DNA of 63,517 bases, filler included, from Octopus bimaculoides (lineage: Eukaryota): assembly GCF_001194135.2 (NCBI RefSeq). It is 6 parts of 6 records of this genome, joined end to end, with 100 filler letters (N's around TTAATTAATTAA, not from the genome) between each part and the next. Parts side by side here need not be neighbours in the genome. Positions count along the whole stretch, not along the records: positions 54,022 to 59,583 come from NW_026357037.1; 5 more parts are not named here. The stretch is one strand, 5' to 3'. How positions within the stretch are numbered: the first letter of the stretch is position 1; each line of letters starts with the position of its first letter. A model generated the notes under the pieces. The model was not told the origin of the DNA. It was given only the letters and a program-made list of their open reading frames with translations, and ran no database searches. The translations under genes and the position numbers were made by a program. This document shows positions 47,897 through 59,583 of the stretch, piece by piece.

Positions 47897-47915
47897 CGCC
47901 ACTTTGTTCCAACAT
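47897..47915 (-). CDS. Candidate short coding exon (MLEQSG, phase-1 donor)
   Basis: GCG|GTAAGT donor; ATG in GAAATG context; TCACGTGA E-box ~100 nt upstream on the minus strand. Alternatively a 24-nt phase 1-1 micro-exon 47897-47920. Confidence 0.3.
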
Positions 47916-48329
47916 TTCAGCTAGCTAACTCAGGAATAATGGGATTGCTCTTGTTCGTGTCAGAAAGTGGAACGAGGCTAGCAACAATTCTACACTAACA
48001 AAGAGACAGAGAGGGGGTGTCACGTGATCTTCTCAAAGCAGAAGTACGAGACACTGAGAGGGGGGAATGGGAGGAGAATTAGATATGAAATACGAAGATA
48101 TGTTCTGTATTAGAAAGTATTGTCAGAGGTTCGATATTACTGCGTTAAAGACTTAGTAGGAATTCATTAACTATTTAGCAAATACATAGAATTTCCTGAA
48201 ATTGAAAGGGGTCTATACAGGACTGATGCACTTTTCACCAAGGGAAATATATGGAATCTAGAAATAGAGAGGCTCTGGAAACGACTTTGAACACTGGGAC
48301 TTTCCATGTCAACAAAGCAGGAACATAAC

Positions 48330-52813: not shown

Positions 52814-52941
52814 CTAACAACAAAGAAATAATTGCAAAACAATCCGAAAGGGTGGCTGGTGTGCTGGAATTATCAGACGAATTATAGCACATATTTCAGT
52901 GGTTTCTTCTGAGAAATTAAAACATTGAATAATGACGAGAT
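52814..52941 (-). CDS. Candidate terminal exon of the minus-strand secreted-protein gene
   Basis: Acceptor TATCGTCTTTCCTTGCAG; phase-1 frame open: DLVIIQCFNFSEETTEICAIIRLIIPAHQPPFRIVLQLFLCC*. Confidence 0.3.
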
Positions 52942-53429: not shown

Positions 53430-53477
53430 CTTGGGAATGTAATTCGTGTAGTTTGAACATTCCAAACATAATTAAAT
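53430..53477 (-). CDS. Candidate 48-nt symmetric exon of the same gene
   Basis: TTCTGTTGTTTTATTAG acceptor, AAG|GTATTT donor; phase-1 frame DLIMFGMFKLHELHSQ is open. Confidence 0.4.
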
Positions 53478-53820: not shown

Positions 53821-54188
53821 TATATATAAATAATTGCAAATGGATAAGAGCATCAATTTAATAGTCATTATTAAGGAATCACATTAAATAATCATTTATA
53901 TACACATAGATATATGGATATNNNNNNNNNNNNNNNNNNNNNNNNNNNNNNNNNNNNNNNNNNNNTTAATTAATTAANNNNNNNNNNNNNNNNNNNNNNN
54001 NNNNNNNNNNNNNNNNNNNNNTTTAATTTAAACCTTTAGTATAGCATTTACAGTCCCCACCTCCCATTATAACTCTATGTAAACCAGCGTTCTTATTTCT
54101 AACGGTCACTTACTTGGCCATGTAATATTATAATATTATAACTCGTAAGCTACCTCATCATTTCGCATTTGTCTTGCTTCTATATGTT

Positions 54189-54279
54189 GGTTCCCTGACG
54201 ATGAATATGTGTGCAATTCCAGCAGCTCTTATTTCTTTGGAGTAGAGTACACATATATTTTGAAACATGTGTAGGAATT
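54189..54279 (+). ncRNA. Type I hammerhead ribozyme candidate
   Basis: Stem I GGTTCC/GGAATT; core CTGACGA 54195-201 plus an extra T; stem II GAATAT-GTGTGC/GTACAC-(AT)-ATATTT; GAAA 54262-65; palindromic ACATGT; GTA triplet 54271-73. Confidence 0.6.
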
Positions 54280-54575
54280 AAAGGAACTTTTATTTATATG
54301 CGTTTTGCTCCATTTATTGTTATTATTCATATCTACTCAAAATGCATCACTTTAACTTGATATCTCTACCTATAACACGTGTGTGATATCCTGGGTTTTT
54401 TTTGTGTGATTTTTGCTACCCATGGTAACTATTAACATATTTACATTGTCAAGGATTTTTAAAATGAGATAATATTAATATATACATAAACTAATATATA
54501 TGTATATAAGAGAGAGAAAGAGAGTCACAGATAGAGACAAACATTAGAATGCAGGTGAAATAAATGGTAACTTAC

Positions 54576-54611
54576 CAAGGTAAGGTTCTGCTTTGCTACT
54601 TCCTGGCTCAG
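54576..54611 (-). CDS. Coding exon 3 (36 nt, phase 1-1) of an unknown secreted protein
   Basis: CTATTATTTTGTTCTTTCAG acceptor, TTG|GTAAGT donor; AEPGSSKAEPYL. Confidence 0.8.
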
Positions 54612-54769
54612 CTGAAAGAACAAAATAATAGTATTTATATAGATATATATAAATAATAGTTATACATGTATACATATACGTGTGTATATTTGTATATGTA
54701 TATTTATGTATATATACTTTTATATACATGTGTATATATGTGTGTGTGTGNNNNNNNNNNCCCTGGACT

Positions 54770-55048
54770 GGCTCTTGTGTGGGTGGCACGTAAAATACAC
54801 CATTTTGAGCTTGACCATTGCCAGTACCTCCTGACTGGTTTTCGTGCTGGTGGCACGTAAAAGCACCCACAACACTCTCTGAGTGGTTGGCGTTAGGAAG
54901 GGCATCCAGCTGTAGAAACTCTGCCAGATCAGATTGGAGCCTGGTGCAGCCATCTGGTTTTCACCAGTCCTCAGTCAAATCGTCCAACCCATGCTAGCAT
55001 AGAAAGCGGACGTTAAACGACAATGATGATGATGATGATGATGATGAT
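54770..55048 (+). mobile_element. SINE-like family F 3' part, (GAT)n tail
   Basis: GGTTGGCGTTAGGAAGGGCATCCAGCTGTAGAAAC...GCTAGCATAGAAAGCGGACGTTAAACG; copies at 55620-56170, 57700-57805 and on the minus strand at 58755-58935. Confidence 0.8.
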
Positions 55049-55173
55049 ATATATATGTATATATATATTTATATGATGTTGTGCAATATATAAATGAAAA
55101 CTTAGCGAGTTTGGTCATGGAAATATTTAGAAAGTACAGAAAAAAATAAAATGGAAAGGAAAAAGAAACTTAC

Positions 55174-55218
55174 CTGCAGGTGAATCCGTAGCCGGACGAC
55201 CACAACTTAATCCAATGA
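55174..55218 (-). CDS. Coding exon 2 (45 nt, phase 1-1) of the unknown secreted protein
   Basis: TTTTTTGCATTTCTCTCCCAG acceptor, CAG|GTAAGT donor; (L)IGLSCGRPATDSPA. Confidence 0.85.
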
Positions 55219-55460
55219 CTGGGAGAGAAATGCAAAAAATTATATATCATATCAATATCTTTATATACATGTGTGTATACATATATAGTAAAATAGCCTT
55301 ACGCGCATTAAAGTGAAAAATATATATATCTATGAGTATATAAACATATCTATACACATTTACATTTACAAAAATCATGTGTGTATGTATATATATATAC
55401 ATTATTATTATTATTATAATAAAGTATTTGCAATGGATCAGTTTTGAGCTCTATTTAAAG

Positions 55461-55502
<42 letters not shown>

Positions 55503-55619
55503 AAAACTCAATTGTGAGTATTTTGCTAAGTTTGTTAACAAATACTATATTCTTTTGCCTAATTTTTGGTATACAAAAATATATATAAACACACACACAC
55601 GCGTGAGAAGACCCGGCAA

Positions 55620-56170
55620 GCCAAGTAAGATCGTTGCCAGTGCCCCTGGACTGGTTCTTGTGCGGGTGGCACATGAGATGCACCATTTTGAGTGTGGCCG
55701 TTGCCAGTACAGCCTGACTGGCTCCCGTAGGATTTTCGAGCGAGATCGTTGCCAGTGCCCCTGGACTGGCTTGTGCGGGTGGCACATAGAAGNNNNNNNN
55801 NNNNNNNNNNNNNNNNNNNNNNNNNNNNNNNNNNNNNNNNNNNNNNNNNNNNNNNNNNNNNNNNNNNNNNNNNNNNNNNNNNNNNNNNNNNNNNNNNNNN
55901 NNNNNNNNNNNNNNNNNNNNNNNNNNNNNNNNNNNNNNNNNNNNNNNNNNNNNNNNNNNNNNNNNNNNNNNNNNNNNNNNNNNNNNACACATAAAAGCAC
56001 CCACTACACTCTCTGAGTGGTTGGCGTTAGGAAGGGCATCCAGCTGTAGAAACTCTGCCAAATTAGACTGGAGCCTGGTGTTGCCATCCGGTTTCACCAG
56101 TCCTCAGTCAAATCGTCCAACCCATGCTAGCATGGAGAGCGGACGTTAAACGATGATGATGATGATGATA
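55620..56170 (+). mobile_element. SINE-like family F with internal tandem units
   Basis: Repeated GTTGCCAGTGCCCCTGGACTGG..GTGCGGGTGGCAC units, gap, then the family F tail. Confidence 0.8.
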
Positions 56171-56204
56171 TATATATTGCCTGTGGATAATACAGGTAGT
56201 ACAG

Positions 56205-56385
56205 GTGTTTGTCTCCCACCATTGCTTGACAACCGATGCTGGTGTGTTTACGCCCCCGTAAGCTAGCCGTTCGGCAAAAGAGACCGATAGAATAAGTACT
56301 AGGCTTACAAAGAATAAGTCCTGGGGGTCGATTTGCTTGACTATAAAGGCGGTGCTGAAACATGTAAAGAGAGAGTAAAAGAGAG
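56205..56385 (+). mobile_element. SINE family A tail
   Basis: Matches the family A tail. Confidence 0.8.
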
Positions 56386-56413
56386 AATATATAATGGTAT
56401 AAAGATGACTTAC

Positions 56414-56453
56414 GAGCACTCAAAGCTATGGCAACGATAAATCGCAATGCCAT
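56414..56453 (-). CDS. First coding exon (signal peptide) of the unknown secreted protein
   Basis: Exon 56414-56462: CTCTTCTTTCTCTATTTCCAG acceptor, AAAATG start, CTC|GTAAGT phase-1 donor; MALRFIVAIALSA+C joins exon 2 in frame. Confidence 0.87.
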
Positions 56454-56499
56454 TTTTCGAACCTGGAAATAGAGAAAGAAGAGAACTTATATAAGATAT

Positions 56500-56935
56500 C
56501 AGCATACAAATGCATAAGTATATATGTTATACACACACACACACACACACACACGTGCATACATACATATACACTCACATTCATATATACACACATACAT
56601 ACACACGTGCACAATCACACAAAAACACACTCATATATACATACATACACACACATACACACACACATATACACACATACGTACACACACACACATGCAC
56701 ACTCACACATACATACACACACACGCATATATACACACGTACTCACATATGCACACATACATACACACACACATACACACTCACACATACACACACATGC
56801 ACGCTCACATATACACGTATATACACTCACCCACACACACACACAAAGACACTCACATACACACACATGCATACACACACACACATATACACATACATAC
56901 ACCTCTCACATATACACATATACACACACACATTA
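56500..56935. repeat. Compound (CA)/(TA)/(CATA) microsatellite
   Basis: Direct reading; source of the His/Thr-rich pseudo-ORFs. Confidence 0.95.
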
Positions 56936-56936
56936 A

Positions 56937-57160
56937 GGCAGTGAGCTGGCAGAAACGTTAGCACGCCGGGCGAAATGCTTAGCGGTATTTCGTCTGCCGC
57001 TACGTTCTGAGTTCAAATTCCGCCGAGGTCGATTTTGCCTTTCATCCTTTAGGGGTCGATTAAAAAAGTACCAGTTACGCACTGGGGTCGATATAATCGA
57101 CTTAATCCGTTTGTCTGTCCTTGTTTGTCCCCCTCTGTGTGTAGCCCCTTGTGGGCAGTA
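56937..57160 (+). mobile_element. SINE family B (OK-type), well preserved
   Basis: GGCAGTGAGCTGGCAGAAACGTTAGC...GAGTTCAAATTCC (B box). Confidence 0.88.
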
Positions 57161-58062
57161 AAAAAAAATAACACACNNNNNNNNNNNNNNNNNNNNNNNN
57201 NNNNNNNNNNNNNNNNNNNNNNNNNNNNNNNNNNNNNNNNNNNNNNNNNNNNNNNNNNNNNNNNNNNNNNNNNNNNNNNNNNNNNNNNNNNNNNNNNNNN
57301 NNNNNNNNNNNNNNNNNNNNNNNNNNNNNNNNNNNNNNNNNNNNNNNNNNNNNNNNNNNNNNNNNNNNNNNNNNNNNNNNNNNNNNNNNNNNNNNNNNNN
57401 NNNNNNNNNNNNNNNNNNNNNNNNNNNNNNNNNNNNNNNNNNNNNNNNNNNNNNNNNNNNNNNNNNNNNNNNNNNNNNNNNNNNNNNNNNNNNNNNNNNN
57501 NNNNNNNNNNNNNNNNNNNNNNNNNNNNNNNNNNNNNNNNNNNNNNNNNNNNNNNNNNNNNNNNNNNNNNNNNNNNNNNNNNNGGATGTTGAGTCTGCCA
57601 GAAGCGATGACAAGTAACCGAAAGAATTCTGGTGATTTTCTCTGCTCGAGAAGACAAGTGAAGCTCTGTGAAATTGTTGACGTCATCATCAGTGCCAGCG
57701 ACACACACGAAAGGCACCCCAGGCTGGTGGCACATAAAAGGCACCGGGTACACTCTGTAGAGTGGTTGGCAATAGGAAGGTCATCCAGCTGTAGAAACCC
57801 AGCCAAAACACACACACACACACACACACTTATGTGTGTGTGTGTGTGTGCATGCATGTGTGTGTGCATGCATGTGTGTGTGCATGCATGTGTGTGTGCA
57901 TGCATGCATGTGTGTGTGTGTGTATGTGTACGCATATATATTTGTGTGTGTGCATGTGTGTGTATGTATGTATGTGTATATATATATATGTATAGAGAAA
58001 GCGAGATATCTATCTACNNNNNNNNNNAGAGAGAGAGAGCGAGATGTTTATCTATCTATCTA

Positions 58063-58101
<39 letters not shown>

Positions 58102-58625
58102 GTGTGTGCAAATAGATATAGATATGAACACATTCAAACAGACACACAAACACAGATGCTCTCTCTCTCTCTCTCTCTCTCTCCCTTCTCTTTCTCCTCT
58201 CTCTTTCCCCCTTTCCTCTCTCCCCACTCTCTCTGTTTTTCTCTCCCCCTCTCCCTCTCTGTCTTTCTCCCTCCCTCCCTCTCTCTCTCTCCTTCATACA
58301 CACAGGTAATTCTTTGGCGTCACCACATTTGTGAATTCATTAAATATACTAATTAAATGTAATCATTTCATAAAGTAATTGTAAAGACCCATCTTTCCCT
58401 TTTATCCAACCTCAACGTGAATAATAAAACAACTGCTTCGTTAACCAAACATAAGGCATCTTTATAGATGTCACGTCCATCTAGTTAATTTAATTAATTA
58501 ATTCAATTAATTGATGATTATAGCCACTAATAAGATCCTTGTGTATACCACAAAGTAAACTTTAAAATGGAGAAGTCAAAACTTTACTGGTTTGTATGCA
58601 ATCTATTCTAAGCAATAGTATAAGA

Positions 58626-59170
58626 CATGTGGCTGTGTGGTAAGAAGTTTGCTTCCCAGCTACTTGGTTCTGGGTTCAGTCCCACCTTGGGCAAAAATAT
58701 CTTCTGCAGTAAGTAGCCCTGGATTGAACAAAGCTTTGTGAGGTGGATTCAGTAGACATTTAACGTCCACTTTCCATGCTAGCATGGGTTGGACGATTTG
58801 ACTGGAAACTGACGAACCAGGATGGCTACACCAGGTTCCAATCTGATTTGGCAGGGTTTCTACAGCTGGATGCCTTTACTAACGCCAACCACTCCAAGAG
58901 TGTAGTGGGTGCTTTTTACGTGCCACCGACACGAGGGTGTGTGTGTGCATGTGTGTGTGTGTTTGTGTCTTTGTGCCGTTGTCTCCACCACTACTTAACA
59001 ACTAGGGCTGGGTTTTTTTTTTTATGTCACCATAACTTAGCTGTTCAGCAAAAGCACTCGATACAATAGGTACCAGACTTATAGATTATAAGTACTGGTG
59101 TTGATTTGTTCAACTGAAAGTCCTCCAAGACAGTGCCCCAACATGGTAACAGTCCAATGACCAAAATAAG
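58626..59170 (+). mobile_element. Old SINE family A interrupted by a minus-strand family F tail
   Basis: Head 58626-58755, family F reverse complement ~58755-58935, A tail to ~59170. Confidence 0.7.
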
Positions 59171-59370
59171 TACAGAACAAAAAAATATAACGTGCAGTTT
59201 AATTTCAGCAGTGCATGCTCAAGAAAAATTGTCTCCAGTGCATTAAAGGGGCTTCACTATTCTGTCTATCATGGCCCATAAAAGTGCCAGTTTAGCGCCA
59301 CACAGAAGCACCCACAAGTGGTGCCATGTAAAAGCACCTAACACACTCTGTAAGGTGGTTCCAAGACAAA

Positions 59371-59583
59371 AGATGTTCTTCCATCAGGATAATGCTTGGC
59401 CACATACAGTGAGGATGACATTCCAAAGGCTGGAGCAGTTTGAAAGGGAAATGATGCCCCACCCACTAAATTCGACGGACCTAGCCCCCATCTGATTATC
59501 ATTTATTCCGCAGTCTTCAGAATCATTATGGACAGAAAAAATATGAATTCTGTAGATGAGGTGTGAACAGTCCTGGAGGAATA
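59371..59583 (+). mobile_element. mariner (DD34D) transposase remnant
   Basis: FFHQDNAWPHT...PHPLNSTDLAP(+1)SDYHLFRSLQNH; 34 residues between the second and third Asp after correcting one frameshift. Confidence 0.85.

What the first reader, a model, noticed from the sequence alone, without database searches (positions are those of the whole stretch)
54576..56462. Unrecognised secreted protein built from very short symmetric phase-1 exons
Seen: three exons with textbook splice sites (40 coding, 45 and 36 nt) splice in frame to MALRFIVAIALSALIGLSCG-RPATDSPAAEPGSSKAEPYL, i.e. a basic/hydrophobic signal peptide with a likely cleavage after SCG. None of this is apparent from the ORF track. Further symmetric candidates are 53430-53477 and possibly 47897-47920, with a terminal candidate at 52814-52941. 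Known: schistosome micro-exon genes use a signal peptide plus skippable symmetric exons to diversify secreted proteins. Inference: a taxon-restricted cephalopod secreted peptide or precursor with combinatorial splicing potential.
Basis: partly seen in the sequence, partly recalled or inferred. Interest (0 to 1): 0.7.

Follow-up and report, generated by a model that had tools for sequence, protein, structure and literature searches.

The report
Probable secreted-protein gene start, three short exons
Three small exons on the minus strand join in frame to give a convincing secretion signal followed by a short Pro/Ala/Ser/Glu-rich stretch, so this is most likely the ordinary 5' end of a secreted-protein gene whose remainder lies beyond the piece; nothing shows it is a special "micro-exon" gene.

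Summary
On the minus strand, 56453-56414 (40 coding nt), 55218-55174 (45 nt) and 54611-54576 (36 nt) splice in frame to MALRFIVAIALSALIGLSCGRPATDSPAAEPGSSKAEPYL, leaving one base over (phase 1). All three donors are GTAAGT, and only four GTAAGT occur on that strand. The three acceptors rank 1st, 2nd and 4th of 265 AG sites. The same chain never appeared in 1000 dinucleotide shuffles or on the plus strand. The spliced N-terminus passes simple signal-peptide rules that 0.4% of random peptides pass. The exons are 43-51% GC against 17-37% in their flanks. Both assembly gaps lie inside introns, within or beside SINE copies. The flanks of the 194-N gap are colinear parts of one SINE, so the frame does not depend on the gaps.

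A secreted N-terminus is well supported by sequence alone. The micro-exon, combinatorial-splicing, taxon-restricted and cephalopod claims could not be tested. Two symmetric phase-1 exons after a signal peptide are the norm for secreted proteins. No fourth exon is credible within the piece. No homologue was found, but the databases evidently lack this genome, so that negative result carries little weight. There is no transcript or conservation evidence. Interest is low to moderate.

The parts
56486..56493 (-). TATATAAG, a TATA-like motif with its first T about 31 nt upstream of 56462. It is a possible core promoter if exon 1 is the first exon.
   Evidence: Read directly. Inference only, because AT-rich DNA gives many such motifs.
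56414..56462 (-). Exon 1 as bounded by the acceptor-like site ctctatttccag|G and the donor CTC|GTAAGT. The ATG is at 56453 in the context gaaaaATGg, giving 40 coding nt that encode MALRFIVAIALSA plus the first base of codon 14.
   Evidence: The acceptor score is 11.2, the best of 265 AG sites on the strand. A CTGAT branch-point-like motif lies 36-40 nt upstream.
55219..56413 (-). Intron 1, phase 1, nominally 1195 nt including the 194-N gap at 55793-55986. It holds one SINE copy (about 55600-56169) and a copy of a second repeat family (about 56215-56335).
55174..55218 (-). Exon 2, 45 nt, phase 1-1, encoding (L)IGLSCGRPATDSPA. It supplies the end of the signal peptide, the predicted cleavage site SCG|RP, and the start of the mature chain.
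   Evidence: Acceptor score 7.2 (rank 2) and donor CAG|GTAAGT score 8.6 (rank 1). GC is 0.51 against 0.27 in the flanks.
54612..55173 (-). Intron 2, phase 1, nominally 562 nt including the 10-N gap at 54751-54760. It holds a SINE copy (54761-55036) and a (TA/CA)n simple repeat.
54576..54611 (-). Exon 3, 36 nt, phase 1-1, encoding (A)EPGSSKAEPYL plus a leftover G.
   Evidence: Acceptor score 5.2 (rank 4, tie) and donor TTG|GTAAGT score 4.4. GC is 0.50 against 0.17-0.27 in the flanks.
54022..54575 (-). Start of intron 3, with the rest of the gene cut off by the piece edge. Alternatively, if the donor is not used, read-through gives ...EPYLGKLPFISPAF* (stop codon at 54544-54546).
   Evidence: One search found no acceptor with a positive score except 54194 (score 1.2), which would give GNQHIEARQMRNDEVAYEL*. 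The read-through ORF is listed.

Best explanation
This is the 5' end of a spliced protein-coding gene on the minus strand. It encodes a protein that enters the secretory pathway.

Exon 1 carries the start codon and the first 13 residues of a cleavable signal peptide. A phase-1 intron splits the hydrophobic core. Exon 2 completes the signal peptide, with predicted signal-peptidase cleavage after Ser-Cys-Gly20. Exons 2 and 3 then encode the first 20 residues of the mature protein or pro-protein, RPATDSPAAEPGSSKAEPYL. That segment is rich in Pro, Ala, Ser and Glu and is probably disordered, like an N-terminal linker or propeptide. The reading frame leaves exon 3 open in phase 1, so the functional part of the protein is encoded by exons beyond 54022, outside the piece.

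Shown: the sequence anatomy and its improbability by chance. Inferred: transcription, splicing, secretion and the cleavage site. It is undecided whether transcription starts just upstream (TATATAAG at about -30) or in an untranslated leader exon further upstream, as the very strong acceptor at 56462 would suggest.
For: - The exons and the translation are exact.
- Three of the only four GTAAGT on the strand terminate the three exons.
- The acceptors rank 1, 2 and 4 of 265 AG sites, and the exon-2 donor ranks 1 of 369 GT sites.
- There is one three-exon chain on the minus strand, none on the plus strand, and none in 1000 shuffles.
- The spliced N-terminus passes signal-peptide rules that 0 of 89 unspliced ATG-ORFs in the piece and 0.39% of random peptides pass. 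It passes only because exon 2 extends the hydrophobic core.
- Exon GC is 0.43-0.51 against 0.17-0.37 in the flanks.
- The start context gaaaaATGg has A at -3 and G at +4.
- The exons lie in unique sequence between repeats, not inside them.
- Phase-1 introns close to the signal sequence are typical of secreted proteins, including in a mollusc.
- The gap flanks are colinear within one SINE.
Against: - There is no transcript, junction-read or cross-species conservation evidence of any kind.
- No homologue was found and there is no literature match.
- The strict chain statistic used thresholds chosen after seeing the sites. The relaxed test gives only p of about 0.013 for a signal-peptide-like two-exon chain.
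- The exon-1 donor is weak on its exon side.
- Only 40 codons are visible and no downstream exon can be shown.
- My splice and signal-peptide scores are crude approximations from general knowledge, not trained models.
Confidence: 0.65

Rival explanations
1. It is a chance look-alike. Unique AT-rich intergenic or intronic DNA happens to carry three GTAAGT sites downstream of pyrimidine tracts, and no mRNA is made from it.
For: There is no expression or conservation evidence. The piece is otherwise all repeats, with SINEs, microsatellites and a mariner remnant. About 1.5 GTAAGT per strand are expected by composition. The relaxed test finds a signal-peptide-like chain in 1.3% of shuffles, and the first-stage reader scanned a great deal of sequence.
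Against: The joint pattern argues against chance. It combines top-ranked acceptors, three GTAAGT at 36-49 nt spacing, matching phases, an ATG in a good context, a hydrophobic core completed across the junction, and a GC rise in each exon. It was never reproduced in 1000 shuffles nor on the opposite strand.
Confidence: 0.15
2. Exon 1 is an internal exon of a larger gene, and the hydrophobic stretch is a transmembrane or signal-anchor segment rather than a cleaved N-terminal signal peptide. The frame is open from the acceptor (VRK-MALRF...), so coding could enter in phase 0 from an upstream exon.
For: The site at 56462 is the best acceptor on the strand (score 11.2) and has a branch-point-like CTGAT. 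The nine bases before the ATG are open in frame.
Against: The uncharged hydrophobic run is 13-16 residues, which is signal-peptide length and short for a membrane span. The ATG has a strong initiation context. No candidate coding exon was found upstream in the piece at the same thresholds. A strong acceptor fits an untranslated leader exon equally well.
Confidence: 0.08
3. It is a micro-exon-type gene: a signal peptide followed by many short symmetric cassette exons that can be skipped in combination to vary a secreted product.
For: Both internal exons are short, multiples of three, and phase 1-1, so skipping either keeps the frame. The exon-2-skipped product still passes the crude signal-peptide rules. 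The introns are 12-30 times longer than the exons.
Against: Only two such exons exist in the piece, and 36-45 nt is at the upper end of micro-exon size. Phase 1-1 exons are the default in secreted proteins. The post-signal motif of MEGs is absent.
Confidence: 0.07
4. It is a very small gene that ends here. The exon-3 donor is not used, and translation runs on to a stop, giving a 51-aa precursor MALRF...AEPYLGKLPFISPAF and a 31-residue secreted peptide.
For: The read-through frame is open for 11 more codons and then stops. AATAAA motifs lie at 54318 and 54294 on the minus strand.
Against: The exon-3 donor is TTG|GTAAGT. AATAAA is frequent by chance in DNA that is about 70% AT, and a strong unused donor 3 nt before the continuation would be unusual.
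Confidence: 0.05

Closest known systems
Generic metazoan (including molluscan) secreted-protein, neuropeptide or toxin precursor genes with a phase-1 intron next to the signal sequence
   Same: It has an N-terminal signal peptide and phase-1 introns at coding nt 40 and 85, inside or close to the 50-100 nt zone where secreted proteins, conotoxins and neuropeptides of Conus textile show a strong phase-1 bias. The same phase-1 excess around the cleavage site is seen in animals generally. A polar, acidic, Pro-rich segment follows the signal, as in many propeptides.
   Different: The first intron cuts the hydrophobic core at codon 14 rather than the cleavage region. No dibasic processing site, amidation signal or cysteine framework is visible in the 20 post-signal residues. 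There is no sequence similarity to anything searched.
Schistosome micro-exon genes (MEGs)
   Same: A signal peptide is followed by short exons whose lengths are multiples of three, separated by much longer introns. In-frame skipping is therefore possible.
   Different: MEGs have 10-20 micro-exons of 6-81 bp, mostly about 15 bp. They are restricted to Schistosomatidae and share a hydrophobic/aromatic motif just after the signal peptide. Here only two exons of 45 and 36 nt are seen, the post-signal sequence is RPATDSPAAEPG, and no alternative splicing has been shown.
Extracellular-matrix genes built of phase 1-1 cassette exons, such as vertebrate elastin (from my own knowledge, not tested here)
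   Same: Short exons all split the codon after its first base, so any exon can be skipped in frame. The encoded segments are rich in Pro, Ala and Gly. The leftover G at the end of exons 2 and 3 matches the split Gly/Ala codons common in such genes.
   Different: No repeat motif of a structural protein is visible in 20 residues, there is no homology, and the body of the gene is not available.

Membership tests
Classical secretory protein (cleavable N-terminal signal peptide) | A positively charged n-region, an uncharged hydrophobic h-region of about 7-15 residues, and small residues at -3 and -1 of the cleavage site | tested here: met
   The peptide reads MALR / FIVAIALSALIGL (mean hydropathy 2.78) / SCG|R. 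It passes crude rules that 0.39% of random peptides and 0 of 89 ORFs in the piece pass. SignalP was not available.
Classical secretory protein (cleavable N-terminal signal peptide) | The signal lies at the true N-terminus, so the ATG at 56453 is the initiator | tested here: inconclusive
   The initiation context gaaaaATGg is good, but the frame is open back to a very strong acceptor at 56462. No 5'-end data are available.
Classical secretory protein (cleavable N-terminal signal peptide) | Phase-1 intron bias near the signal sequence (a statistical hallmark, not a requirement) | tested here: met
   The introns after coding nt 40 and 85 are both phase 1. Compare.
Schistosome-type micro-exon gene (MEG) | Most of the coding sequence is made of many (10-20) very short exons, 6-81 bp and mostly about 15 bp | tested here: inconclusive
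   Only two short internal exons (45 and 36 nt) are visible. The remainder of the gene is cut off, and there is no further credible exon in 54575-54022.
Schistosome-type micro-exon gene (MEG) | Exon lengths are multiples of three, giving symmetric phases | tested here: met
   The exons are 45 and 36 nt, both phase 1-1.
Schistosome-type micro-exon gene (MEG) | A conserved hydrophobic/aromatic motif immediately after the signal peptide, with homology to the schistosome family | tested here: not met
   The post-signal sequence RPATDSPAAEPGSSKAEPYL has no such motif. No homologue was found.
Schistosome-type micro-exon gene (MEG) | Protein variation generated by alternative skipping of the micro-exons | not testable with these tools
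   No transcript data for this organism can be reached with these tools.
Neuropeptide or prohormone precursor | Mono- or dibasic cleavage sites flanking the peptides, often with Gly as amide donor | tested here: inconclusive
   There is no KR, RR or KK in the 20 visible post-signal residues, only a single Lys35. The leftover G after ...PYL could begin a Gly codon, but the next exon is missing.
Expressed, spliced protein-coding gene | Transcript evidence for the junctions, and conservation in related genomes | not testable with these tools
   The spliced peptide found no hit. Exact exon scans of metagenome contigs found none. The ORF look-up found none. The multi-copy mariner control found only relatives at 58% identity or less, so this genome is absent from the protein collection.

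The most novel reading that the evidence does not exclude
This is a lineage-restricted gene of micro-exon type, a convergent analogue of the schistosome MEGs in a mollusc. A signal-peptide exon is followed by a long series of short phase 1-1 cassette exons, whose combinatorial skipping diversifies a secreted peptide or protein.
Probability: 0.07. Interest if true: 0.6.

Novelty: new member of a known kind. Interest (0 to 1): 0.25.

Why it matters
If real, this is one more secreted protein or peptide precursor with no detectable relatives, and its short exons are invisible to ORF-based scanning. That makes it a small but concrete example of what annotation can miss in repeat-rich, AT-rich animal genomes. 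It would matter more only if full-length transcripts showed a long run of skippable micro-exons or a bioactive peptide. Nothing here shows either.

Tried and rejected
- The 40-aa product was searched against 5.8 billion proteins, and no candidate shared three 5-mers.
- As a control for database content, the mariner transposase remnant of the same piece found only relatives at 45-58% identity, from spider, ant and unnamed metagenome sources. A multi-copy transposon should hit near-identical copies if this genome were present. The negative result therefore carries little weight.
- Exact scans of JGI metagenome contigs for exon 2 and exon 1 found nothing.
- An exact look-up of the unspliced 108-aa ORF found nothing on record.
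- Pfam and PDB sequence searches found nothing. DUF5993 at E=0.067 on the unspliced ORF is noise.
- Full-text literature searches for fragments of the peptide and of the SINE found nothing, and neither did one supplement search.
- The Rfam hits (mir-297, mir-466, mir-3149 and others) all lie on TG/CA microsatellites, far below the gathering scores, and were rejected as artefacts. No tRNA was found.
- The fourth GTAAGT, at 54113, was tested as a donor for exon 4. Every acceptor entering in phase 1 meets a stop before it, so it was rejected.
- A 135-nt candidate exon at 56354-56220 inside intron 1 lies in a repeat and passes the site thresholds, but it is closed in the frame required after exon 1, so it was rejected as a coding cassette.

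Full report
**Scope.** Only places 54022-59583 are genome. The piece is 5562 bases, 621 of them N in four gaps: 54751-54760, 55793-55986, 57177-57583 and 58018-58027. GC is 0.395 overall.

**The observation.** Reading the minus strand shows the following.
- Exon 1: ctctatttccag|GTTCGAAAA ATG GCA ... GCT C|gtaagt. The ATG is at 56453 and the last exon base is 56414.
- Exon 2: ttctctcccag|TC ATT GGA ... GCA G|gtaagt, at 55218-55174 (45 nt).
- Exon 3: ttgttctttcag|CT GAG ... CTT G|gtaagt, at 54611-54576 (36 nt).

Joined, they translate without a stop to MALRFIVAIALSALIGLSCGRPATDSPAAEPGSSKAEPYL, with one base left over.

**The gaps, tested first.** Both gaps named in the finding lie inside introns, so their unknown lengths cannot alter the frame. 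Only contiguity and orientation matter.

An alignment of the SINE copies shows that the copy in intron 1 is colinear with the ungapped copy in intron 2 across the 194-N gap. The left flank stops at ...GGTGCTTTTATGTGT. The right flank resumes at CTTCTATGTGCCACC. That is the same point of the element, in the same orientation. The two flanks therefore belong to one SINE, the join is plausible, and the true gap is probably far shorter than 194.

At the 10-N gap the SINE body stops at CCAGTCCAGGG, and a (CA)n(TA)n repeat follows the gap. The other copy shows about 45 more bases of SINE tail and then (TG)n(TA)n. This is consistent with continuity but weaker evidence. In addition, the three contigs carry exons on one strand, in order, and with matching phases, which itself argues for correct scaffolding.

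**Is it more than chance?**
- GTAAGT occurs four times on the minus strand (56413, 55173, 54575, 54113) and once on the plus strand. Three of the four end the three exons.
- With a crude donor matrix and a pyrimidine-tract score, both approximations from general knowledge, the three acceptors rank 1st (11.2), 2nd (7.2, tie) and 4th (5.2, tie) of 265 AG sites on the strand. The exon-2 donor ranks 1st of 369 GT sites. The exon-1 donor is weak on its exon side, with a score of 2.2.
- I required acceptor score at least 5, donor score at least 2, length 15-200 nt and an open frame. The plus strand yields no candidate exon. In 1000 dinucleotide-preserving shuffles the mean was 0.24 candidates, and no chain appeared. 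These thresholds were chosen after seeing the sites.
- I therefore also ran a looser, more agnostic search for any ATG-started spliced chain whose product looks like a signal peptide. The plus strand gives none. Of 2000 shuffles, 26 give at least one.

**The signal peptide.** The n-region is MALR. The h-region is FIVAIALSALIGL, 13 residues with mean hydropathy 2.78. The c-region is SCG, with Ser at -3 and Gly at -1. The peptide passes simple rules that none of the 89 unspliced ATG-ORFs of the piece pass, and that 0.39% of 200,000 random peptides of the same base composition pass.

The unspliced reading (MALRFIVAIALSARKSS...) fails, because the hydrophobic core is completed only by exon 2. That gives independent support for the first junction.

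Each exon is also a GC island: 0.43, 0.51 and 0.50, against 0.17-0.37 in the 100 bases on either side. The start context is gaaaaATGg. The exons sit in unique sequence between repeats, not within them.

**What lies around it.**
- Upstream of exon 1 there is TATATAAG at 56493-56486, about 30 nt before 56462. There is also a CTGAT branch-point-like motif and the best pyrimidine tract plus CAG of the whole strand.
- Exon 1 is therefore either the first exon behind a TATA box or the second exon behind an untranslated leader. The sequence cannot decide between these.
- The nine bases before the ATG are open in frame (VRK). An upstream coding exon cannot be strictly excluded, but none was found in the piece, and a 13-16-residue hydrophobic run fits a signal peptide better than a membrane span.
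- Downstream of exon 3, none of the 32 AG sites in 54575-54022 has a good pyrimidine tract. The best is at 54194 (score 1.2) and would give GNQHIEARQMRNDEVAYEL*.
- The fourth GTAAGT, at 54113, cannot be reached in frame.
- Read-through of the exon-3 donor would end the protein as ...EPYLGKLPFISPAF*.
- The most likely reading is that the gene continues beyond the edge of the piece.

**External evidence.** None could be obtained.
- The 40-aa product has no candidate in the 5.8-billion-protein collection, none in PDB, no Pfam match and no literature match.
- Exact scans of metagenome contigs for exons 1 and 2 were empty.
- The unspliced ORF is not on record.
- These negatives are nearly uninformative. 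The mariner transposase remnant of the same piece is a multi-copy element, yet it found nothing closer than 58% identity and no cephalopod source. The collections evidently do not contain this genome or close relatives.
- For the same reason I could not verify that the organism is a cephalopod. The SINE family looks familiar to me from octopus genomes, but that is memory, not a test. Searches found no published copy of it.

**Interpretation.** The best-supported reading is the 5' end of an ordinary secreted-protein or peptide-precursor gene. A signal peptide is split by a phase-1 intron. It is followed by a short, probably disordered Pro/Ala/Ser/Glu-rich N-terminal segment on two small phase 1-1 exons, and the functional body of the protein lies off the piece.

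The phase pattern is not special. Phase-1 introns are the commonest class in proteins with signal peptides and cluster near the signal sequence. [quoted passage not shown] The introns here fall at coding nt 40 and 85.

The micro-exon-gene analogy rests on two exons of 45 and 36 nt. Schistosome MEGs have 10-20 micro-exons, mostly about 15 bp, are confined to Schistosomatidae, and share a hydrophobic/aromatic motif after the signal peptide. That motif is absent here. The architecture permits in-frame skipping of either exon, but nothing shows that it happens.

**Verdict.**
The secreted N-terminus is supported. The micro-exon, combinatorial-splicing and taxon-restricted claims are untested.
- I put 0.65 on a real secreted-protein gene start of the ordinary kind.
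- The rivals are a chance look-alike (0.15), an internal exon of a membrane protein (0.08), a true micro-exon-type gene (0.07) and a tiny gene that ends by read-through (0.05).
- Novelty is a new member of a known kind. Interest is 0.25.

Noticed in passing
window 59300-59583, + strand: This is a remnant of a mariner-type (Tc1/mariner, 'SETMAR'-annotated) transposase C-terminus: ...FFHQDNAWPHT...PHPLNSTDLAP / SDYHLFRSLQNH. It is broken by a frameshift near 59495, has stops upstream, and is cut by the edge of the piece. The best database relatives are 45-58% identical and carry PF01359/PF13358.
   Followed up: partly
window 54761-55036 (-), 55600-56169 (-), 58745-58916 (+), fragment 57700-57810 (-): Four copies or fragments of one SINE-like family are present, with a (CAT)n head followed by GTTTAACGTCCGCT..CATGCTAGCATGGGTTGGACG... 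Two copies sit in introns 1 and 2 in the same orientation as the gene and are 93-95% identical to each other. Both assembly gaps of the finding fall at these copies: the 194-N gap lies inside the intron-1 copy and the 10-N gap follows the body of the intron-2 copy.
   Followed up: partly
window 55793-55986: The 194-N gap is probably overestimated. Its two flanks stop and resume at the same position of the SINE consensus (TTTTATGTG / TTCTATGTGCCACC), as if the contig ends nearly abut or differ by one internal subrepeat.
   Followed up: partly
window 56215-56335 (-) and 58985-59108 (-): This is a second interspersed repeat family, about 75% identical over about 125 nt (CAAATCGACCCCCAGGACTTATT...TTGTCAAGCAATGGTGG). 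One copy starts only about 60 nt downstream of exon 1.
   Followed up: partly
window 56945-57176 (-): A third repeat-like element (GGGGCTACACACAGAGGGGGACAAACAAGGACAGACAAACGGATTAAGTCGATTATATCGACCCC...) abuts the 407-N gap. It is unrelated to the other two families in pairwise alignment, and ARAGORN found no tRNA in it.
   Followed up: no
window 56220-56354 (-): An acceptor (ctttacatgtttcag|C, score 5.2) and a donor bound a 135-nt open stretch inside the second-family repeat in intron 1. This is a possible transposon-derived cassette exon. It is closed in the frame required after exon 1, so including it would truncate the protein.
   Followed up: partly
window 56531-56932, 57832-57977, 58065-58108, 58159-58291: Long imperfect TG/CA, TGCA-interrupted and GA/CT microsatellites are present. 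The first (about 400 nt) lies only about 40 nt upstream of the TATA-like motif of exon 1. All Rfam 'miRNA' and 'snoRNA' matches in the piece fall on these and score far below the gathering thresholds.
   Followed up: yes
window 56453-56414 joined to 54611-54576 (-): Skipping exon 2 keeps the frame and gives MALRFIVAIALSAAEPGSSKAEPYL, which still passes my crude signal-peptide rules. This is an in-silico curiosity only.
   Followed up: no
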